Positions 30,124 through 40,481 of a stretch of 64,000 nucleotides of DNA are shown piece by piece. A program made the translations under genes and the position numbers. The first letter of the stretch is position 1; each line of letters opens with the position of its first letter. The stretch covers positions 290,392 through 354,391 of the forward strand of contig NW_013657653.1 in assembly GCF_000142905.1 (NCBI RefSeq). Direction: 5' to 3'. This DNA is from Thecamonas trahens ATCC 50062 (taxonomy: Eukaryota; Protista; Apusomonadida). Below the pieces are notes generated by a model. It worked only from the letters and a program-made list of their open reading frames with translations. It searched no databases and was not told the origin of the DNA.

Positions 30124-31362
30124 TCAGTGGTGGTGCCCCTTGCACTCTCGCCCGCCGTGTGAATGCCGCCCTGATGCAGCAGCGTGGCGACAGGTAGTGC
30201 CACATTTCCGCGGAAAGCGGACGACGTTGGAGCACATGGCGCGACCAATGATGACCACGGCGAGAATGACGCAAAAGACGATCGGGAGCGCAACGAGGAA
30301 GACGCTGACCGGGTCGTTGTCGTCAGCCCAAGCACCCGCAGACTTGCTGATGAGGTGCGGGACGACTATGGTCTTCCAGAACTCGTCGCCCGCGCGCCCT
30401 GCGCCGCACACAACGACAGCTTCGTCCAAAATGGTAAAGCCGGCGTCGAAGCACCTGCCTCGTGGGGCAAGGACAGCCGCCTCGTCGCCGACACGCAGCG
30501 CGCACCAGCCGCCCACGCCCTCGGCGACAGTGGCCAAGCGTTCGAGCTCGCCGCCGGCAGCCTCCACCGCGGCCGAGTATGGTGCAACGAGCAGAGTAGG
30601 GAACGTCGCCGCACCCCGCTCGACAGTCTCAAGCAGTGCTGCGAGAAGGTGGCCGGTAGCGGCAGCAGCCACATCGGCTTCGACAAACACGCCCGAGATC
30701 GGGCCCTCGCCGGCGAGCACGTCTGCGGCGGCAGCGGTCGAAGCGTGACCGACCGCGGAGCAGAGACCAAGGTTGGCGACGACGTCGTCGACGATAGGTG
30801 TGCCTGCGGTGACGGCACCGTCCCACAGGACGTCGACGTGCGGCGCATCGCCGGCTCGCGCAGCGTTGTTGAGAGCCTTGGCGAGGTTGACAAAGCGGGC
30901 AAAGTAGCCGAGGACAAGTTCAGTCTCACCCCCGGGCACCGCGACGTGAACAAAGGTTCTCTTTGGTGAGCGATCGGCAGTGTACGCAGCGTCGAGCAGA
31001 GCTTCGTGCAGATCGCCGAGGAGCGCCGAGGAGTGGTCGCTCCTCGCAGCCAACGTTGCCGCGCGCTGGCTCTTGACCAGCGCGGCCGAGCAGTGCATGG
31101 GCGAGAGGATGGACGGCGCGGCGGCACCCAGAGGCAACTGCGTCCATGCATCCTCGAGCGCGCATGCTGCTGACAAGGCCGCTGGTCGCGGAACGGGTGA
31201 GCTCGCCGAGGCAGGCAGAGCCTGCTGGGCACCACCGGCGCGTGTGGCGGAGGCAGCTGGCGCCATGCCGTCCTGGGCGCCGGTAGCCAGCCACCACACG
31301 CAAGCCGCCACGAGAGCAGCCGCCAGCAGCAGGGCTAGGCGGACACGTGCAAAGTGGTCCAT
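30124..31362 (-). CDS. Hypothetical membrane protein (N-terminal signal anchor, C-terminal TM)
   Basis: ATG at 31362 (MDHFARVRLALLLAAALVAACVWW); C-terminal TM SVFLVALPIVFCVILAVVII. The ORF-track extension upstream is translated minisatellite. Confidence 0.65.
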   Translation of the reverse strand: MDHFARVRLALLLAAALVAACVWWLATGAQDGMAPAASATRAGGAQQALPASASSPVPRPAALSAACALEDAWTQLPLGAAAPSILSPMHCSAALVKSQRAATLAARSDHSSALLGDLHEALLDAAYTADRSPKRTFVHVAVPGGETELVLGYFARFVNLAKALNNAARAGDAPHVDVLWDGAVTAGTPIVDDVVANLGLCSAVGHASTAAAADVLAGEGPISGVFVEADVAAAATGHLLAALLETVERGAATFPTLLVAPYSAAVEAAGGELERLATVAEGVGGWCALRVGDEAAVLAPRGRCFDAGFTILDEAVVVCGAGRAGDEFWKTIVVPHLISKSAGAWADDNDPVSVFLVALPIVFCVILAVVIIGRAMCSNVVRFPRKCGTTCRHAAASGRHSHGGRECKGHHH

Positions 31363-31476
31363 GCGAAGAGGTGAGGTGAAGTGCAGGGAGGAAAGGGGTG
31401 GGGATGGGGGTGAGTGGGGCTGGGGCTGGGGTGCGCGGGTGGGGTTGGAGGCGGTGGTTGGGGTATTGAGATAGCT

Positions 31477-31952
31477 GGGCCCATTGGTGATGGTTGGAGA
31501 TGGTGGGCCCATTGGTGATGGTTGGAGATGGTGGGCCCATTGGTGATGATGGGAGATGGTGGGCCCATTGGTGATGATGGGAGATGGTGGGCCCATTGGT
31601 GATGGTTGGAGATGGTGGGCCCATTGGTGATGGTTGGAGATGGTGGGCCCATTGGTGATGGTTGGAGATGGTGGGCCCATTGGTGATGATGGGAGATGGT
31701 GGGCCCATTGGTGATGGTTGGAGATGGTGGGCCCATTGGTGATGGTTGGAGATGGTGGGCCCATTGGTGATGGTTGGAGATGGTGGGCCCATTGGTGATG
31801 GTTGGAGATGGTGGGCCCATTGGTGATGATGGGAGATGGTGGGCCCATTGGTGATGGTTGGAGATGGTGGGCCCATTGGTGATGGTTGGAGATGGTGGGC
31901 CCATTGGTGATGGTTGGAGATGGTGGGCCCATTGATTCTGGTTGGAGATGGT
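31477..31952. repeat. 28-bp tandem minisatellite, 17 units (GGGCCCATTGGTGATGGTTGGAGATGGT and a GATGATGG variant)
   Basis: Units start every 28 nt from 31477 to 31925; no spacers. Confidence 0.97.
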
Positions 31953-32059
31953 GATGGCTAAACCCATGCATCATTGCTGGTGTTGGCGGAATGCTGATTG
32001 GCTGGGGGGCCACTCGTCTCGCCCTTTCACCCGAACAGGCCACGACGTACTGACTGACC

Positions 32060-35000
32060 ATGGCGGTCCATGGCGTGCAGACGCCCTCCGAAGTCGTCAA
32101 GAAGGCCACAATGGCCCTGCTGGCAGCTACAAAGGCCGTTCACGCACAAGTGCCTAATGGAGAGCCACTTGTGTCCGCTGCCGCTGCCTACGCTCGTGCC
32201 CTTGGCACCAAGCTCCAGCTGAAGACCTCGTCGTACGCGTGCGCCGAAGCCGCTCTGGCCACGGGCGTCGCCGCAGGTCTTCCGCAAGTCATCGCCGCCC
32301 TTGTCGCCTGGCGCGAGGCGCACCCGGACGAGGCGCATACGCCGGCGGTGGCCTCGCTCGCCGCTGCCTGGGCTGCTGCCGCTGCCGACGTCGGCTGCGT
32401 CGCCGGCGACCTCGCCCAGCACACGGTCGCCAACGCCGACCTCTCCGCCGGTCTCTCGCGCCGCCCGGCCGCCTTGCCTCCGTCACCGGCGGCGTCGTCG
32501 TACGCGCTTCTGGCAACCATACTCCGCGCGCTACTTGCGCCCGACGCGGCTGACATCGGCCCCGTCGTCCGCGTCGCCTCGGCAGGCCTCCTTGCTGAGG
32601 CTGCCGCTGTCTTCAATCCAGACGCTGTCGAGTCATGGGCAACGCAGCTCGACATGCTCTGTGGCGCCATCGAGACCTACGCCGACGACCCAGCGAGCCT
32701 TCCGCGACCGGCATCGGGTCCGCCGCTCCTTCTGCACCTTCGCTCGTGGCGCCAGCTGGCGTCGGACGTCGCCGCCGCCGCGCCCACCGCCTCCCTCTAC
32801 TCGGCAGCCACCTACTTTGCCAGGCTCTTCAACAAGCTCGTCGCTCACATCCGCGACAACGGCGCTGTCGTCTCTAACCTCTTCCATTACCAAAAGATGT
32901 CGGCCTCGCTCGGCATGCCCAAGAAGGTTGTTGTCTCGCTTGTCGAGGCCTTTGCCGCCATGCGGACCGCCGGCGCAGACGTCGCCTCCAACCCGACCGC
33001 CGCGGAGTGGACTCGCATCCGCTCGGTCGTCACCGAGCTCCTTCCGCTCGCCGTCGAGACCATCACCACCTGCACCCGCATGCAGGCCGCGCTCCCACCT
33101 TCGCCATTCACTGACGTCCTTCTCACTCTGCTCAATGAGCTCTGGGCTGTCGCCCGCGTTCTCGGCAAGGCGCTGGCAACCTTTAACGCAGCCATCACCT
33201 CCCCGCGGCTTCTCTCTGACGACGCATGGGATCCGCTGCTCAAGGTCATTGTCGGCCTGGCATCCGCCGCAGAGTCTGCAGACGCTGGCTTGCTTGCGCC
33301 GGCCAGCTATACCGCAGGGTCGGCCGCCGACGCAAAGGCTGCCGTCAATTCCCAGCTGGAGGTCGTCCTCGCCGCTGTCGGTAGCCTCGGCGAAGCCATC
33401 GTCGACGAGGTCGTGTGGCCCATCTGTGCCACCCACGGCGCCGCGCTCGCTGACCTCGTGCAAAAGGTGACCCAGCTGACGCTCATGAGCGTTCGGCTTG
33501 CCCGCAGCGTGCCGAATGAGACCGGCACAGCCTTTCTGGGCTGGATTCGATTCGTTGTCTCTGAGCTCGTTGCCGTCATCCACTTCGCTGCCTCGGCACT
33601 CCACGAGTCGTCGCCGCCGGCGTACGCCGTCTGGCTCGCGCAGATGAACGCTGACTCTACCGCCGCCGCTGCCGCTGCCGGCTCCGGCATGGCCGCCGTA
33701 AGCACCGATGACGACACCGCGCTCCTCGGCGGCGGTGCGTACGTCATCGGTGAGCTCTGTGCTGCTCTCCAGGCTGCGTTTCACCCCGCGCTCGCCAGCG
33801 AGCTGGTCCTCGACGGCCTGCCGCTGATCACCACAGCTGCCGCCGACGCCGCTTCCGCCGTCGTTACTTCTATTTCACCGTACGTGGTGCCGGCCGGGAG
33901 CCTGGTGCCGGCGGCGGTTCTCGTTGCTGATTCTGTGCCTGTGGCGAGTGGGCTAGGTGCGAGTGAGGCCGGCGGCGGTGTCACGCCAGGCCTTGTCGCG
34001 TGTGTTGCGCTGGCTAGAGTCGACGCGCTAGCGGCGGCGAGTGCCAAGCTCGCCGATCTCGGTTCTAAGCAAGATGTCCAGCTTTCGACGCTGGTGATGC
34101 TGGGAACGGATGCGGTCGAGGCTGCCACCGCTCTCGTGACCCTGTGTTCGGCACTGGGCGCATCGCTTGACCCGGTCCGCGGACGGACTCTCGCGGCGCT
34201 CGGGGCACATGGCAAGATTGCGGCGTCGGTCCTGGTCCGGTTCGGTGAGTCGGCAACAGGCTCGCTCCCGCGGCTCTCCAAAGCAGTCATCGAGCCGCTT
34301 GTCTCTGGTCTTGCCCGTCACTGCACCCGAGTGCTCGATGTGCTCTGTGGCCCGTCAGCCATCGCTCCTGAGCTCCTTGCACAGTGGGTCGAGGGTTGGG
34401 GCGCGCCATCGCGCGAGGCCGTCGACGCCCGCGTGGCTGAGCTGGCGCGCGCATGTACCGCTGCCGCCGCCGTCGCAACCAGCGATTCATCTGCTGTCGG
34501 TGTTGGGAGCAGCGGTGCCGGGCCGGCGAGCTCCCGTGGCGCCGAAGCGCCCTCGGCGCCGGTCGACATTGACGCCCTTGTCTCGGGTCTCCAGTCGGCT
34601 ATGTGGCGCGGGCCGCAGGGTGTGGCGGCCTCGATGGGCAATGTGACGCCAGACCTTGCCGAGGAGCGAACTCGGCTGACCCGCGCACTGGACGAGCTCC
34701 GCGAGGGCAACACCGAGCTGCTGCGACTGATGACTGAGGATTCGCTAGTCTCAGGCATTGTGCTCGACGAGGTCATTGGCGCGCCACTCAAGGCTCTTGT
34801 CCTTGGGTGCATGCAGGTCTTTCTTGTCCTGCCGAATGCAACGGCAACTACAGCGGGCGACTCGCACTACGCCAACGTGGCCAAGATGGGCGTTGCGCTT
34901 TGCTCGGCGTATGCGCGGGTCTTTGACCTCGGCTCTGTTGCGCCGTCGGGCAAGCACCTGCTGTTCGCGGCGCAGCGGCTGGAGGCCCTCGACACTCTTC

Positions 35001-38000
35001 GGGCGGTCCACGAGCAGATCCGTGACAACGGGCGGAGTTTTGTGGCCGACGTGCCGGTCATCGACCTCGGCGCCGGATCGCTGGCAAACCAGCTCGGCGG
35101 CGTGGCTGAAGCCCTGGTGGCCGCGCTAGACGAGGCGCGGAAGACACTCGCGTCACAGCCGTCGTACGCGCTCACCGCGCTCTCGTCGGTCGGCAGCATG
35201 CTCGACGCCATGGCCATGTCGACCTCGCACCTTGTTCGCCAATGGCCGCGGTGTGATGACGAGGCTGCAGCCGACAAGCTCTGGCAAAACGTGGCGGCCC
35301 TCGGCCGTGGTGCCGGGCTGGCTCCGTCCGCAGCTGCGCCATCGTACCTGGGCGTGGTGACGGTGGCGCGCGATCTGCTCGAGCTGCCGCAGTTTGGCGG
35401 GAGTGGCGACGAGCTTCTGGTAGCAGTGGCACGGCTTGTTCCGCAGCTTGCGAGTGGTGTCGAGGCGACTGGGCAGCTGCTGCGCTCGGCGGCGCAGCCG
35501 GTTGTTGATGTGGCCGGCGATAGCAGGGACGTCGACGTCCTAGCCACCGTGGTTCAGCTCGTGGTGTTTGCCCGCGAGGTGAGCCAGGTGCTCGGCAGTG
35601 TCTTCCGAGCGGTGGCGCTTTCTCTGGCTACCCACATTGCGCCAGCTGGCGTCGGCAGCAGTGCTGCGCTGGAAGCGCCAATCAGCTCAGGCCTGGTGGG
35701 CGTCCTTGTGGCGTCGCTGGCAGCGTGGCTGGCGCCGAGTAGCGACGGCGGCATCTTGGTTCCTCGGACGTGGCTGGCGAGTCCCGGCGTGGCCAGCGCT
35801 GTCGGCCTCGGACAGGTGCCTCGGGCCGGTCTGGCCGGGGCGATGCTGCGCTCCGCTCGCTCGTCGAAATGGGCGAGCGGCTGGGACGTGGCTCGCCCGG
35901 CGGTGAGGTGGGTGAGACCAGCAGCGCCTCGTGCATCACGTCGCTTGGAGTGGAGACGGCGACCAAGGCCAGCTTTACAACGTTCTGTCGACTCGCCACC
36001 GGCGTGCAGCTCGCGGAAGCATCCGAGCTCGCTGGGCAAGACGCTTGTGCGCTTGTGAGCGCGGCTGCGCAGGTGAGTCTGGCGAGTCTGACGTGTGCGC
36101 TGGTGGTGACAGCGTCGCGGCGAGTGGCGGTGTCGTCGGTAGGCAGCGGGCTCACGCCGCAGGCACGGGTCTGGCTCCGTGGCGCAGTCAAGATTGGGAC
36201 GCTGGGTGCCGAATGGTGTGTGGCAGCGGGCCGCGGACAGCTCGATGTCGCCGGACTCGGGGGTGCCGCGCCAGCGCTTGCGCTTGTGGTGCCTGCGTTT
36301 GACTCGTTGGGCGCGGTCAAGTCGCGCGAGGCGACGCTGGTGGTGGAACGGTTGGAGGATGGGTTGTGCGTTGGGTTTGACGAGGCCAAGCGTGGGCTAG
36401 TCAAGCTGCAGGGCCTGGTGCCTGCGGCTGCGCAAGCGATGCAGATCCGGGCGAGCGGCGGGGGCGGGAGCGAGATGGAGGCCGCGCGGCATGTTGTGGA
36501 ACCGTTTGTGACCGGACGGGTCCTTGCCCAATGGCTGGGCGGACTCGACGCGGTGCTGCTACGGGCGATGCAGCGGGTTCTCGGCCTTCTTGCAGCAGCG
36601 TCTGTGGCCGAGGCTGTGGAGGCGCTCACGGCGTGTCTCCCGCCGCTGTGCGTTCTTGCGGGATCTGTGAGCATGCACGTGGTGGCGGGATCAGGCGGCC
36701 CGCAACAGGGCTCGCTGACCGTGGCCAAGTACCTGAGCGGTGCATTCAAGGCTCTGCTCGAGTGCGTGCACATTCTCTGGTTTGTGGTGAATCAGGGTCG
36801 GGCAAGCGGGCGGTCGGCTCAGTCGGTGCTCTTCTCGCCGGCTGTGCTGGCCAAGCTCGGGCTCAAGATCCACAACTTTGCGCTTGCGCTGACGGATGCG
36901 GACGGAATGATGTGGCTCTCGCTGCGGTCCAAGGTTGCCGCCAAGGTTGCGTTGCAGCTGCTGGACGTTGTAGCGCCACCGGATGCTGAGTTTGAGCGGC
37001 TGGCGCGGCTGTATGGATCGGGAGCAGCGCGGGCGGCGTCGGAGGAGGTGCTGCGGAGCACGAGCGAGACGACGCTGGCGGCTCACGTCCGAGTGGGGCT
37101 GGTTCGAACCCTCAACTCTGCGGTACCTGTGCTGGAGGCGATCCAAAATGCACCTGCACAGGTGAGCAGCCACGCGGCGACGCATGCGCGGCATCTGCAT
37201 GTGACGGTACTTGCGTGCTTTTGTGCGGCGTCGGGTCCGCGAGCTCGTGGCGAGATCCGCGACGAGGCCGAGGACCTGGGCCGCGAGCTGCTCGATGTGG
37301 GTACCGAGCTGGAAATGGTGATGGGGCGGTTGATGAAGGTCAACTTTGCGATCAGTATGGAGTCATCGCGGGAGCAGTACCTGCTCGTGCGGCTACTGGG
37401 CCGGATGGCGCGGTATGCGCAGGACGCGTCGCACGGGCTGCTGTTTGACGGACAGGGCTCGTCTGAGATCAACAACAGCGCTGGAGCGATTGCCAAGCTC
37501 TGCTCTTCACGGATGCAGGTGTTTGGTGCGGTCATTGCGCGCGAGCTCGAGCTCCAGGCGGGCGAGGTGCTTGTCGAGGTCCGGCCCGGCATCGGCGCGG
37601 CAGAGGACGGCGATGGGCGGGCGCTGGTGAGCCACGCCAAGAACATCGGAGTCGGCGTGCAGAGGATGGTGAGTGTGCTGGACGAGGTTCGCCAGGTGCT
37701 GGTGGCGGCCAATGTGGAGATGCGCGGCGACATTGGCGAGCTCTCGCGCGAGCTGACCGCGTCGGGCTCGGGCGTTGTCCGTGTTGCGGCCGAGTGCCAG
37801 AACTCGCTCGGCGATGAGGCGGTGGTAACCCGTGTCCGCGAAGCGCTGAACAAGCTTGTGGGTCAAGTCAACAGCACGCTCGCGTTTTTCACGCTCCGGG
37901 CCGAGCTCCGTGAGTTGCAAGAAGTCGCGGTTGCGTCGCTCAAGAAGATCTCGTCGGGCTTTGCAGGTGAGCTGCGAGCGCTGCTGTACGCGATCGGGCG

Positions 38001-40481
38001 GTCGGGCGCAGCAACGGCTGACATGCTCGGTATTCTCAACGCCGGAAGCAACCAGGCGACGAGCGTAATTGAGACCACGCGGCAGAGGATCGCTGACGTG
38101 TCGGCGACGGCCAAGCCGTATCTTCTTGGACTCCCGTCGGACGAGCTCCGCGACCTTGTGATGCGACCGCTCAAGGTGTACCTGCAGAGCGCGATTTCAC
38201 TGTTCCGCGAGTGCGTAGCCATGACGCCGGCTAACTTTCTCTTCCACTGCGAGTCGATCAAGGGCAAGGCCCACGTGGTGTCGGTCACGCTCTCGGCGCT
38301 CCTGGTCTCGATCTTTGACACCGAGGAGAAACGGCAGCTCTTGCTCGAGCGGGCGGCGCTGGAGCAGGATGCAGCCAAGGCTGCCGAGCGCGAGCGGATC
38401 CGGGCCGAGCTCGAGCTGCGCGACAAACTCGAGCGCGAACGGCTGGAGCGCGAGCGGCTCGAGCGGGAGCGACTGGAGCGTGAGCGGCTCGAGCGCGAAC
38501 GGCTCGAGCGGGAGCGAGTGATGCGGGAGAAGCTTGAGAAGGAGCGGGAGCTCGCTGCCAAGCGCGAAGCAGAGGCTGCGGCTGCCGCCAAGGCCGAGGC
38601 CGAGGCACGCGCAGCTGCTGCAGCCGCTACAACTGTGGCGGTCGAGGCCAAGCCTGAGCCCGCTGTCGATGACGTCGATGCGCTACTCGGCGAGCTGGCC
38701 GGCGATACAGGAGACAGCGCGGCCAAGTCCGAACCCGAGCCCGAGCATGCGGTCGATGACGTGGATGCGCTACTCGGCGAGCTGGCCGGTGATGCAGGAG
38801 ACAGCGCGGCCAAGTCGAACCCGAGCCCGAGCATGCGGTCGATGACGTGGATGCGCTACTCGGTGAGCTGGCCGGTGATGCAGGAGACAGTGGGGCCAAG
38901 CCCGTGGTCGATGGCGTGGATGCGCTCCTCGACGAGCTGGCCGGCGAGAGTAGGTCCGAGCCGGTTGCTGCTACAGCCGAGGCCCAGGCGGGCTCGGAAG
39001 CGCAGCAAAAGCCTGTTCGGAAGGATACAGCCCAAGTGGTGGACGACGTCGATGCGCTGCTCGGCGAGCTGGCTAGCGATGTGGGAGTGGGCGAGGGCCA
39101 GCGCAAGACCACCGATCAGGCTGTGGAGGATGTCGACGCACTGCTCGGCGAGCTGGCTGGAGAGGCGGGCCCAGGTGACAACACATGCGTGAGTGCGAGT
39201 GCTGCAGCTGCCGGTACGCCGGAGCATGACGATGTCAACGCCCTGCTCGACGAGCTTGGCGGGGCCGAGCCCGACGAGGCGGTTGAAGATGTGGACGCGC
39301 TGCTGAACGAGCTCGGCGGCGGCGATGGCAGCAGCAGCGTGAGCAAGCCGCAGCCGAATGTGGGCGGCGAAGCAGAGGAGGCGAACGTTGACGTGCTACT
39401 CGGCGAGCTGAGCCAGGCCCGGAGCGCGCCAGAGGAGTCTGTGGATGACCTGCTGCAGGATCTCGACCGGCGGTCGGGTGGGCGAAACAAGTCTGTGCGC
39501 GCACCTACCATTATGGGCATGTCGGCGCTGGAGGCGCTTGTTGGCGACATCGAGACCAAGCCAGGTGGAGCGGGGCGGTCGCGCAAGTCGACCCTCAACG
39601 CGCTCTCGGTCAACGAGCTGCTCTCGACACTTTCTGAGATGGAGACGCCGCGGTCGACGCCCTTTGCAGCTGCGACGCCGGCCGAGTCGGCTGACGACCA
39701 GGAGGACGTCGACTCGCTCCTCGCCGAGCTGGCAGGCAAGCTCGAACCTGTGACGGCGCCCGACGAGGGCGAGGATGAGATCGAGCGACTGCTCCGTGGT
39801 TTCTCGGCGGGCGGCGATGCTGCGAGTGCTGGCACGAGTGGGTCGGCCGGAGACAGCGCTCCGGCCGCAGCGACTGTAGCGGGCTCTGGCGAGTCGAGCA
39901 CGCAGGCGTCGTCGATCTCGATCGAGGCGCTGCTGGCCGAGATGGAAGGACCGCCGCTGACAACCGGGCCCGAGAGCGGCAGCGGTGGCAACGATGGCAC
40001 GCCGGCGTCTGCCTTGCCAAAGCACGTGCGGCGCAAGCCGACGGTGCGTCCGTCATCGGTCTCGCTCGTGGAGCTCCTCTCTGTCCTCGATGACGAGCAA
40101 GAGTCGAGTGAGAGTCGGGCAACGCGTGAGACTGCAGCCGGGGTCGGGGCGAGCGAAAGTGTCGCTCAGGGCGGCGGTGACGACGACGACGACGACATCG
40201 ACGCGCTGCTGTCGGCACTGGAGAACGAGACGGCGCAGATGGACGTGACCGACACGCTGCTGAAGGACGTTGACGAGCTCATCAACGAGGCGCCGGGCGG
40301 GCTCGACGCTGATCTTATCAATGCGCACCCAGAAGACATGCTTGAGGGCTTGTTGGGCGACATGATGGGCGGCGGCGGAGCCGGGTCAGACGGTGGATCT
40401 GGACACGACGAGGACGCGTTCGGCTCTGTCGGCGACACCATGTCGATTCTTCTGGCGGAGCTGGAAGGGATCGAGGCGTGA
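32060..40481 (+). CDS. Giant (~2,800 aa) helical-rod protein with LERER repeat and many paxillin-like LD motifs; frameshifts at ~35838 and ~38816
   Basis: ORFs 32060..36058, 35770..39192 and 38847..40481 join by adding one G in GGGG (35837-40) and one C at ~38816, where the previous repeat copy reads AAGTCCGAA versus AAGTCGAA here. Confidence 0.72.
38664..38900 (+). repeat. ~87-bp coding tandem repeat (about 2.7 copies) encoding AVDDVDALLGELAGDxGDSAAKSEPEPEH
   Basis: Near-identical copies visible at ~38664, ~38751 and ~38837. Confidence 0.9.

What the first reader, a model, noticed from the sequence alone, without database searches (positions are those of the whole stretch)
32060..40481. Giant mosaic adhesome-like scaffold: helical rod + LERER repeat + ~18-20 paxillin-type LD motifs in one polypeptide
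Seen: three ORFs join by two single-base corrections into ~2,800 aa, comprising ~2,100 aa of Ala/Leu/Val-rich amphipathic helices, then (LERER)x5-6, then an acidic disordered tail with repeated DDVDALLGELA, DGVDALLDELA, EDVDALLNELG, SVDDLLQDLD, EDVDSLLAELA, DDIDALLSALE and similar. Established: paxillin LD1 is DDLDALLADLE and LD motifs bind helical bundles (FAK FAT, vinculin tail, talin R8, GIT); paxillin has only 5; the LERER repeat of Mena binds the alpha5-integrin tail; apusomonads encode an integrin adhesome. Inference: this may be an undescribed multivalent or self-associating adhesion/mechanosensing scaffold carrying both LD-binding bundles and many LD ligands. The talin/vinculin-like nature of the rod is a guess from composition.
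Basis: partly seen in the sequence, partly recalled or inferred. Interest (0 to 1): 0.85.

Follow-up and report, generated by a model that had tools for sequence, protein, structure and literature searches.

The report
Giant orphan scaffold with ~20 LD motifs
This is one real 2,807-codon gene of the protist Thecamonas trahens (public model AMSG_05859, function unknown). It encodes a long helical body, a short charged helix and an acidic tail with about 20 selectively kept copies of the paxillin-type "LD" docking motif, far more than the five of human paxillin, but what the motifs bind is untested.

Summary
The three + strand ORFs (32060-36058, 35770-39192, 38847-40481) are one gene. Contigs from the organism's own reads carry an extra G after 35836 and an extra C after 38815, and an independent estuary metagenome also carries the G. 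Both frame breaks are therefore assembly errors. The gene is Thecamonas trahens AMSG_05859, and its public 2,781-aa model hides the breaks with two false introns.

Environmental variants show purifying selection (14 synonymous, 7 non-synonymous changes, omega about 0.18).

The tail holds 18-20 LD-like motifs against 0.4 expected from shuffles. The core positions 0, +1, +3, +4 and +7 are kept while the flanks have drifted. A profile of the copies finds paxillin LD1 peptides first in the whole PDB. It also recognises the eight LD motifs of T. trahens' own paxillin.

The 2,120-aa rod is amphipathic and helical but a complete orphan. It has no Pfam, PDB, talin or vinculin similarity, no paralogue and no homologue in billions of proteins, and its fold could not be predicted.

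LERER x6 is a 15-bp tandem repeat and resembles Mena in pattern only.

A 2019 LD-motif predictor already listed this protein in a supplementary table.

Binding partners are untested, because the complex predictor was unavailable.

Verdict: a new, extreme variant of a known motif class, of moderate interest.

The parts
32060..40481 (+). Whole coding sequence of AMSG_05859, 2,807 codons plus stop once the two missing bases are counted
   Evidence: The N- and C-termini match the public model P0001.
32060..35836 (+). Rod part 1 (1,259 aa): Ala/Leu/Val-rich amphipathic helices with no detectable relative
35833..35840 (+). Frame break 1: the assembly lacks one G of a G run (extra G behind 35836 in the reads)
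   Evidence: table 4 (X3 depth 5.4, X1 depth 3.7).
35839..38418 (+). Rod part 2 (860 aa): helical, and an orphan
38419..38628 (+). Charged Glu/Arg/Lys/Ala helix of about 70 aa. It includes LERER x6 (38428-38517) and is read as a single-alpha-helix-type spacer.
   Evidence: K+R 22, D+E 21, no Gly or Pro. The spacer role is inferred.
38629..40478 (+). Acidic, probably disordered tail (about 617 aa, net charge -104, 3 aromatic residues) carrying the LD-like motif array
38651..38904 (+). Three tandem 87-bp units (TRF reports a period of 86 bp because one base is missing in the assembly), 92% alike, each encoding one LD-like motif. This is the youngest part of the array.
   Evidence: (self-BLAST, 96% identity).
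38815..38816 (+). Frame break 2: the assembly lacks one C (extra C behind 38815 in the reads)
   Evidence: table 4 (X3 depth 7.27); comparison with the neighbouring repeat copy.
38674..38697 (+). LD-like motif 1 (VDALLGEL)
38761..38784 (+). LD-like motif 2 (VDALLGEL)
38847..38870 (+). LD-like motif 3 (VDALLGEL). It is missing from the public protein model.
38916..38939 (+). LD-like motif 4 (VDALLDEL)
39048..39071 (+). LD-like motif 5 (VDALLGEL)
39132..39155 (+). LD-like motif 6 (VDALLGEL)
39234..39257 (+). LD-like motif 7 (VNALLDEL)
39291..39314 (+). LD-like motif 8 (VDALLNEL)
39387..39410 (+). LD-like motif 9 (VDVLLGEL)
39441..39464 (+). LD-like motif 10 (VDDLLQDL)
39528..39551 (+). LD-like motif 11, degenerate (LEALVGDI)
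39609..39632 (+). LD-like motif 12, degenerate (VNELLSTL)
39708..39731 (+). LD-like motif 13 (VDSLLAEL)
39780..39803 (+). LD-like motif 14, degenerate (IERLLRGF)
39921..39944 (+). LD-like motif 15 (IEALLAEM)
40197..40220 (+). LD-like motif 16 (IDALLSAL), preceded by a run of Asp
40341..40364 (+). LD-like motif 17, degenerate (LEGLLGDM)
40440..40463 (+). LD-like motif 18 (MSILLAEL), five residues from the C-terminus

Best explanation
The region is a single intron-less gene, T. trahens AMSG_05859. Two one-base homopolymer-type assembly errors split it in this assembly.

It encodes a giant cytosolic scaffold found so far only in this lineage. The scaffold has three parts:
- a helical body of about 2,120 aa with unknown fold;
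- a Glu/Arg/Lys-rich helix of about 70 aa (LERER x6 plus an EAK-rich stretch), most simply read as a stiff single-helix spacer;
- an acidic, disordered tail of about 617 aa that carries 18-20 short amphipathic LD-type motifs (consensus D-D-V-D-A-L-L-G-E-L-A-G).

The array grew by tandem duplication and is still doing so (three 87-bp copies). Selection keeps the LD core positions.

Inferred mechanism: each motif folds into a short helix on contact with a groove of an LD-binding domain. These would be the same readers used by T. trahens paxillin, whose eight LD motifs are nearly the same (D-D-L-D-S-L-M-A-D-L-G-G). The vinculin tail is the best-conserved candidate found here, and parvin and talin are others. 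The protein could then gather many copies of such a partner on one molecule, or compete with paxillin for them.

Shown: one gene, selection on the gene, the motif array and its selective maintenance, LD1-likeness, and the orphan status of the rod. Inferred: disorder of the tail, the spacer role of the charged helix, and all binding.
For: One gene.
- The extra G and extra C are present in the reads, the codon-phase signal is continuous, and the public model has 2,781 aa.

A functional gene.
- Of 21 differences in environmental contigs, 14 are synonymous. Omega is about 0.18, and P = 1.6e-4 against a synonymous-site share of 0.27.

The motif array is not chance.
- 18 loose matches against 0.43 in shuffles, and 13 strict matches against 0.06.

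The LD core is under selection (17 copies).
- Positions 0, +3, +4 and +7 are 100% hydrophobic.
- Position +1 is 88% acidic and position +6 is 82% acidic.
- Leu at +3 is written with five different codons.
- Codon pairs that differ still keep the residue in 52% of core comparisons, against 8% in the flanks.

LD1-likeness.
- The profile of the copies ranks paxillin LD1 peptides first and second (E = 0.008 and 0.012) and leupaxin LD1 fourth in the PDB.
- The same profile marks 7-8 LD motifs in the T. trahens paxillin orthologue.
- Genome-wide, the DNA pattern for D-hydrophobic-D-[AS]-L-hydrophobic-x-[DE]-L has 18 hits against 1 in the control. Seven are in this gene, six in paxillin and one in a second LD+LIM gene.

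A reader is present.
- T. trahens vinculin has a conserved tail domain (E = 3e-24 to human Vt structures).

Prior work.
- An independent machine-learning LD-motif finder also listed this protein (PMC7703752, Supplementary Table 5).
Against:
- The motif also fits other short-motif classes. D-V-D-A-L-L matches the acidic dileucine pattern [DE]xxxL[LI]. LD motifs overlap nuclear export signals (PMC7703752) and LxxLL-like boxes.
- The PDB profile hits are only borderline significant (E about 0.01).
- Pfam scans of the own genome found no FAK FAT, GIT or CCM3 domains, but the controls for those scans were uninformative.
- T. trahens parvin was not identified, and the talin R8 region is poorly conserved.
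- Nothing ties the rod to adhesion.
- Expression was not shown. Only DNA contigs were laid, and the two metatranscriptome runs with a small share of the words were not examined.
- The second frame correction rests on one run plus internal evidence.
Confidence: 0.45

Rival explanations
1. The tail motifs are functional, but they dock on something other than adhesome LD-binding domains. Candidates are AP adaptor complexes (acidic dileucine [DE]xxxL[LI]), exportin-1 (a nuclear export signal), EF-hand proteins bound in the way calpastatin helices bind calpain, or an unknown lineage-specific partner.
For: D-V-D-A-L-L fits [DE]xxxL[LI] by inspection. Alam et al. report that LD motifs and nuclear export signals overlap and interconvert. 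The rod has no link to any adhesome family. The profile also gave near-threshold hits to unrelated helical peptides, hFip1 and endofin.
Against: The best PDB matches are LD1 peptides, not sorting signals. Positions 0 and +7, which are needed for LD binding but not for a dileucine signal, are 100% hydrophobic. In this genome the strict motif is otherwise nearly confined to paxillin-family genes.
Confidence: 0.3
2. The rod is built of LD-binding helical bundles, and the tail motifs dock onto the protein's own rod, within one molecule (autoinhibition) or between molecules (network formation).
For: The rod is about 75-80% helix. Predicted helices are mostly 20-35 residues long, which is longer than typical HEAT/ARM helices, and they are strongly amphipathic. 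A vinculin-head-like gene in the same genome also ends in LD-like motifs.
Against: The models have pLDDT 41-44, so helix packing is unknown. Foldseek gave no match. There is no sequence similarity to talin, vinculin or FAT families. The rod shows no internal repeats. The idea could not be tested.
Confidence: 0.15
3. The array is a neutral by-product of tandem duplication in a low-complexity acidic region of a fast-evolving orphan gene or a decaying pseudogene, and has no specific binding role.
For: The gene has no homologue anywhere. The first three copies are recent 87-bp duplicates. The genome assembly shows two frameshifts.
Against: The frameshifts are absent from the reads. Omega is about 0.18. 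Old copies keep the core residues through synonymous change while the flanks have diverged.
Confidence: 0.07

Closest known systems
Paxillin-family LD motifs (consensus LDxLLxxL; human paxillin LD1 is the best match)
   Same: The pattern is the same: hydrophobic at 0, +3, +4 and +7, acidic at +1 and +6, with acidic residues in front. The motifs sit in an acidic, low-complexity region. Paxillin LD1 and leupaxin LD1 peptides are the top PDB matches of the motif profile.
   Different: Position 0 is Val or Ile rather than Leu in most copies, and Gly is common at +5. There are 18-20 copies, against five in human paxillin (PMC2572193 abstract, seen; PMC7703752). There are no LIM domains and no match to Pfam Paxillin PF03535. 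Binding is untested.
Thecamonas trahens paxillin orthologue (G000:C13, L057:546-2213:-)
   Same: It is in the same organism and has nearly the same motif, including the Gly after it (D-D-L-D-S-L-M-A-D-L-G-G against D-D-V-D-A-L-L-G-E-L-A-G). It was also expanded by tandem duplication, to eight motifs.
   Different: Paxillin has four C-terminal LIM domains and Pro/Ala/Gln-rich neutral linkers, and is 556 aa long. AMSG_05859 has acidic linkers, a 2,120-aa rod and no LIM domain. No homology is detectable outside the motif.
Non-paxillin LD-motif proteins predicted by LDMF (Alam et al. 2019, PMC7703752)
   Same: AMSG_05859 is row 81 of their Supplementary Table 5. The paper notes that most such proteins in unicellular relatives of animals are species-specific.
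   Different: The main text does not mention Thecamonas and the supplementary file names this protein only once, in Table 5, so the number of motifs, the rod and the gene-model errors are not discussed there. I did not read the whole supplement. The public model they used lacks one motif copy.
Mena (ENAH) LERER repeat, which binds the alpha5 integrin tail (PMC3514034)
   Same: It has the same five-residue unit, LERER, in tandem.
   Different: There are six units here, made by a 15-bp tandem repeat. No EVH1 or EVH2 domain is present. Homology cannot be inferred from a low-complexity charged repeat, and T. trahens integrin tails were not examined.
Talin rod, vinculin and alpha-catenin helical bundles
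   Same: Like them, the rod is long, Ala-rich and all-helical, with amphipathic helices of about 20-35 residues.
   Different: No similarity at the sequence or profile level, even to T. trahens' own talin-like and vinculin genes. There is no FERM, I/LWEQ or Vinculin domain, and the fold is undetermined.
FAM21 tail of the WASH complex, with about 21 LFa motifs that bind retromer (from my own knowledge, not tested here)
   Same: The design principle is the same: a folded body followed by a long acidic disordered tail that carries about 20 copies of one short docking motif for multivalent capture.
   Different: The motif, the partner and the body are different. This is an analogy only.

Membership tests
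LD-motif class of short linear motifs | Core consensus L(0)-D(+1)-x-L(+3)-L(+4)-x-x-L(+7) | tested here: met
   13 strict and 18 loose matches in the tail. Positions 0, +3, +4 and +7 are 100% hydrophobic and +1 is 88% acidic. The top PDB hits are LD1 peptides. Position 0 is mostly Val or Ile.
LD-motif class of short linear motifs | The motif lies in an accessible, disordered region rather than a folded core | tested here: inconclusive
   Composition argues for disorder: net charge -104, Gly 12%, 3 aromatic residues in 616 aa. No disorder predictor or structure model was run on the tail.
LD-motif class of short linear motifs | Binds an LD-binding domain (FAT, vinculin tail, parvin CH2, talin R8, GIT, CCM3) | not testable with these tools
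A conserved vinculin tail exists in the genome.
Paxillin family | Four C-terminal LIM domains | tested here: not met
   Pfam finds no LIM domain in any of the three pieces. The true paxillin orthologue lies elsewhere, on G000:C13.
Paxillin family | Match to Pfam Paxillin (PF03535) | tested here: not met
   No hit at E <= 1.
Talin / vinculin / alpha-catenin | Match to the Vinculin (PF01044), talin rod or I/LWEQ profiles, or to solved structures by sequence | tested here: not met
   phmmer against T. trahens talin-like and vinculin ORFs gave nothing.
Talin / vinculin / alpha-catenin | Fold made of 4-5-helix bundles | tested here: inconclusive
   The AlphaFold2 single-sequence models have pLDDT 41.4 and 43.8. 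Foldseek against the PDB gave TM scores <= 0.12. No homologues exist from which to build an alignment.
Ena/VASP (Mena) | EVH1 and EVH2 domains flanking the LERER repeat | tested here: not met
   No Pfam domain of any kind was found. Only the LERER x6 pattern is shared.
ER/K-type single alpha helix | A long run rich in Glu, Arg and Lys, without a hydrophobic seam and without Gly or Pro | tested here: inconclusive
   In 70 aa there are 22 K+R, 21 D+E, no Gly and no Pro. Leu recurs every 5 residues, which does not fit a heptad (by inspection). No dedicated predictor was run.

The most novel reading that the evidence does not exclude
Thecamonas trahens has built a lineage-specific hub for the LD-motif system. 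This giant protein would display about 20 paxillin-like LD motifs on a spacer helix and gather many vinculin, parvin or talin-type readers at once, or buffer them against paxillin. It would be part of a wider expansion of LD signalling in this organism, which also has a paxillin with eight LD motifs, a second LD+LIM gene, and a vinculin-head-like gene that ends in LD-like motifs. That would be a multivalent, condensate-like way of assembling adhesion plaques in a unicellular relative of animals and fungi.
Probability: 0.3. Interest if true: 0.65.

Novelty: new variant of a known kind. Interest (0 to 1): 0.45.

Why it matters
LD motifs are the docking code that links paxillin to vinculin, FAK, parvin, GIT and talin in animal cell adhesion. 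Human paxillin has five, and other described proteins are reported with fewer (my own knowledge). T. trahens belongs to the sister lineage of opisthokonts, and a complete integrin adhesome has been reported for it (10.1101/2020.04.29.069435).

A protein from this organism with about 20 selectively maintained LD1-type motifs would be the most multivalent LD ligand known to me. It offers a natural test of what multivalency does in this system. It also shows that the motif class was being amplified independently outside animals.

There are practical gains too. The public gene model is wrong at two places and lacks one motif copy. The rod is 2,120 aa of selected, helical protein with no relative in billions of sequences.

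The limits are clear. The gene is an orphan in one species, no partner is known, and a published predictor had already listed the protein.

Tried and rejected
Homology searches for the rod and the tail all returned only the protein itself:
- The search for homologous proteins with ORF1, with P0001 residues 1-1258 and with P0001 residues 2180-2781;
- a full HMMER scan of 1.84 billion cluster representatives with rod part 2;
- two metagenome-contig scans;
- own-genome searches with both rod pieces and with the tail.

Other negative results:
- Pfam found nothing real. The weak Pup, Caskin and DUF1631 hits in the tail are below their cut-offs and driven by composition.
- PDB sequence searches of the rod found nothing.
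- Single-sequence AlphaFold2 of both rod pieces gave pLDDT 41-44, and Foldseek on one of the models gave only noise. I ran no further search on such models.

- Complex prediction (T. trahens vinculin tail L055:6573-7115 with the 32-aa motif peptide window:39012-39107) was unavailable, and nothing was folded.

Partners I could not pin down:
- A search for T. trahens parvin among 67 CH-domain hits was abandoned after the first candidate proved to be an actinin-type actin-binding domain.
- Talin R7R8 of T. trahens is too weakly conserved to delimit.

Readings rejected:
- Introns at the two frame changes. The reads contain the missing bases.
- A membrane protein. Only three 19-residue windows reach a Kyte-Doolittle hydropathy of 1.9-2.0.
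- A pseudogene. Omega is about 0.18.

Handling of the broken frames: no joined or corrected protein was handed to any tool. The pieces were searched apart, and scripts used X at the breaks. One weakly supported joint in metagenome X1 (37555 to 38587, side 24) was taken as cross-mapping from another organism or a repeat.

Full report
OBSERVATION

The window is about 65% G+C. It contains three long + strand ORFs at 32060-36058, 35770-39192 and 38847-40481.

The G+C content at the three codon positions shows one unbroken coding signal from 32.1 to 40.5 kb. It changes phase once near 35.8 kb and once near 38.81 kb.

At the second site, the third copy of an 87-bp tandem repeat reads 'aagtcgaaccc' where the second copy reads 'aagtccgaaccc'.

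I laid public contigs on 35400-39400.
- The organism's own 2010 DNA run (X3) carries an extra G behind 35836, in a run of G (depth 5.4), and an extra C behind 38815 (depth 7.27).
- An independent estuary metagenome (X1) also carries the extra G (depth 3.7).
- The environmental contigs break inside the tandem repeat, so they do not cover the second site.

Both frame changes are therefore assembly errors, not introns or real frameshifts. The product is 1259 + 1 + 992 + 1 + 554 = 2,807 residues.

IDENTITY

A full HMMER scan of 1.84 billion cluster representatives with rod part 2 found exactly one protein, P0001 (2,781 aa, 100% identical). This is 'uncharacterized protein AMSG_05859' of Thecamonas trahens ATCC 50062 (KNC50090.1, A0A0L0DD16).

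Its sequence shows that the annotators bridged both frame breaks with false introns. As a result the model contains about 15 out-of-frame residues at each site and lacks the third LD-like motif copy.

The own genome has 28.7 Mb in 131 contigs, and the window is C27:290392-354391.

IS IT A WORKING GENE?

The environmental contigs (X1, X8) differ from the window at 21 positions. In the corrected frames, 14 differences are synonymous and 7 are not.

With a synonymous-site share of 0.27, this gives omega of about 0.18 and P = 1.6e-4. All three former 'ORFs' contribute to these counts. Expression itself was not shown, because only DNA contigs were laid.

THE ROD (32060-38418)

- Composition: piece A is Ala 21%, Leu 12.8% and Val 10.8%.
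- Secondary structure: single-sequence AlphaFold2 predicts 75-80% helix, with about 70 helices that are mostly 20-35 residues long. The confidence is only pLDDT 41-44, so the packing is unknown. A Foldseek search returned noise.
- Amphipathicity: the mean hydrophobic moment peaks at 100 degrees per residue, with z = 6.6 and 5.2 against shuffles. This confirms amphipathic alpha-helices.
- Membrane spans: there is no convincing transmembrane segment.
- Internal repeats: none detected.
- Similarity: there is no Pfam family at E <= 1 and no PDB sequence match. Nothing matches T. trahens' own talin orthologue, four other I/LWEQ giants or two vinculin-family genes. There is no paralogue in the genome, and no homologue in the large protein collections or in metagenome contigs.

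The 'talin/vinculin-like' idea is therefore unsupported at the sequence level and undecided at the fold level.

THE CHARGED HELIX (38419-38628)

Six LERER units are written by a 15-bp tandem repeat (5.9 copies). They are followed by an EKLEKERE stretch and an Ala/Glu/Lys-rich stretch.

In 70 residues there are 22 Lys+Arg, 21 Asp+Glu, no Gly and no Pro. Leu recurs every five residues, which gives no heptad seam. I therefore read this segment as a single-alpha-helix-type spacer, which is an inference.

Mena's LERER repeat does bind the alpha5 integrin tail (PMC3514034). Six units of a charged pentamer are not evidence of homology, however, and no EVH1 or EVH2 domain is present.

THE TAIL (38629-40478)

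The tail has net charge -104 and only three aromatic residues.

Motif counts:
- The loose LD pattern occurs 18 times, against 0.43 +/- 0.68 in shuffles.
- The strict pattern occurs 13 times, against 0.06 in shuffles.
- The rod has no strict match.

Conservation across 17 aligned copies:
- Positions 0, +3, +4 and +7 are hydrophobic in every copy.
- Position +1 is acidic in 88% of copies and position +6 in 82%.
- Leu at +3 is written with five different codons.
- Among codon pairs that differ between copies, the residue is kept in 52% of comparisons at core positions, against 8% in the flanks.

The three youngest copies are 87-bp tandem units, 92% alike. The array thus grows by duplication, and the LD core is then held by selection.

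IS IT LD-LIKE BY AN UNBIASED TEST?

A profile of 18 copies (alignment A1) was searched against all 177,635 distinct PDB sequences.
- Paxillin LD1 peptides came first and second (4edn_K at E = 0.008; 2vzd_C at E = 0.012).
- The leupaxin LD1 peptide came fourth.
- The PYK2-FAT/leupaxin-LD1 fusion was also listed.
These E-values are borderline, but the ranking is telling.

Within the organism, I identified the paxillin orthologue on G000:C13. It has a 556-aa open frame and four LIM domains, and its best PDB hit is paxillin LIM2/3 at E = 2.5e-39. Its N-terminal half has eight LD motifs, D-D-L-D-S-L-M-A-D-L-G-G, five of them in tandem repeats of about 35 aa. The A1 profile marks them.

A DNA pattern for D-hydrophobic-D-[AS]-L-hydrophobic-x-[DE]-L has 18 matches in the 28.7-Mb genome, against 1 for the reversed control (for the golgin):
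- seven lie in this gene;
- six lie in paxillin;
- one lies in a second LD+LIM gene on C46;
- the remaining four lie in a low-complexity run on C33 (two), on C37 (one), and in a golgin coiled coil on C51 (one).

The motif is thus nearly private to the paxillin family and AMSG_05859.

PRIOR KNOWLEDGE

No paper in the library names AMSG_05859 in its text. Alam et al. [quoted passage not shown] Their main text does not mention Thecamonas, and the supplementary file names the protein only in that table.

They conclude that LD signalling arose in unicellular eukaryotes with paxillin and vinculin as its core, and that most non-paxillin LD proteins are species-specific. T. trahens is reported to have a complete integrin adhesome (10.1101/2020.04.29.069435).

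In the own genome I found:
- vinculin with a well-conserved tail (E = 3e-24 to Vt structures);
- a talin orthologue.

The Pfam scans for FAT, GIT and CCM3 found nothing, but their controls were uninformative.

MECHANISM AND ODDS

The best-supported reading is a giant lineage-specific scaffold whose acidic tail offers about 20 LD-type helices to the readers that paxillin uses. That would make it a multivalent collector of those readers, or a competitor with paxillin for them. I give this about 0.45.

Rivals:
- The motifs serve another reader, such as AP complexes, exportin or an unknown partner (about 0.3).
- Neutral repeat expansion or a pseudogene (about 0.07). The reads, omega and core conservation argue against this.

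The planned test was T. trahens vinculin tail against a 32-residue motif peptide.

EARLIER NOTES OF THE SCAN

Note s1-754185 (87-bp tandem duplication of the motifs) agrees.

Note s1-749533 (a 'mini-vinculin' fused to LD motifs elsewhere in this genome) led me to G000:C19. There, a 630-aa open frame with a vinculin-head-like match ends in an acidic tail with at least three LD-like motifs. This adds a second case of the same style of tail in this organism. I checked it only in part.

VERDICT

This is a new, extreme variant of a known motif class on an orphan body, and it is of moderate interest.

Noticed in passing
L057:546-2213 (-), = G000:C13 about 505045-506712: The T. trahens paxillin orthologue (four LIM domains) carries eight LD motifs, five of them in near-identical tandem repeats of about 35 aa. 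Human paxillin has five. LD motifs are therefore being amplified in paxillin itself in this lineage.
   Followed up: partly
L062:1110-2150 (+), = G000:C46 about 229609-230649: A 347-aa open frame with two LD motifs (DDLDSILADL, DDLDALLNDL) followed by four LIM domains. This looks like a second, leupaxin-like member of the paxillin family.
   Followed up: partly
L060:1090-2979 (-), = G000:C19 about 427089-428978: A 630-aa open frame with a vinculin-head-like match (PF01044 positions 43-215) that ends in an acidic tail with at least three LD-like motifs (for example SDLDALLDTLGAG). The last residues look out of frame, so the array may continue past another assembly error or an intron.
   Followed up: partly
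G000:C33:154704-154789 (-), in L061: LDLDAFLLDL is repeated three times within about 30 residues of an 820-aa open frame. It is a low-complexity run that matches the LD pattern, and its nature is unknown.
   Followed up: no
G000:C43, C45, C60, C15, C50, C7, C12: Seven loci carry an I/LWEQ domain in open frames of about 700-3,200 aa. Only C60 was confirmed as the talin orthologue. The talin/Hip1R family looks expanded in this genome.
   Followed up: partly
window 35758-35840 and 38806-38916: The public protein model KNC50090.1 / XP_013757252.1 bridges both assembly errors with false introns. It contains two short out-of-frame stretches and omits one LD-like motif copy. The true length is 2,807 aa, not 2,781.
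   Followed up: yes
window 35400-39400: Estuary and marine metagenomes from several studies (X1, X8, X10 and others) hold this stretch at about 99% identity. T. trahens or a very close strain therefore occurs in those waters. Two metatranscriptomes held a small share of the words and were not examined.
   Followed up: partly
window 30124-32109 (-): A 661-aa mechanical ORF lies upstream on the opposite strand and overlaps the start codon region. It has no Pfam match, so it may not be a gene.
   Followed up: no
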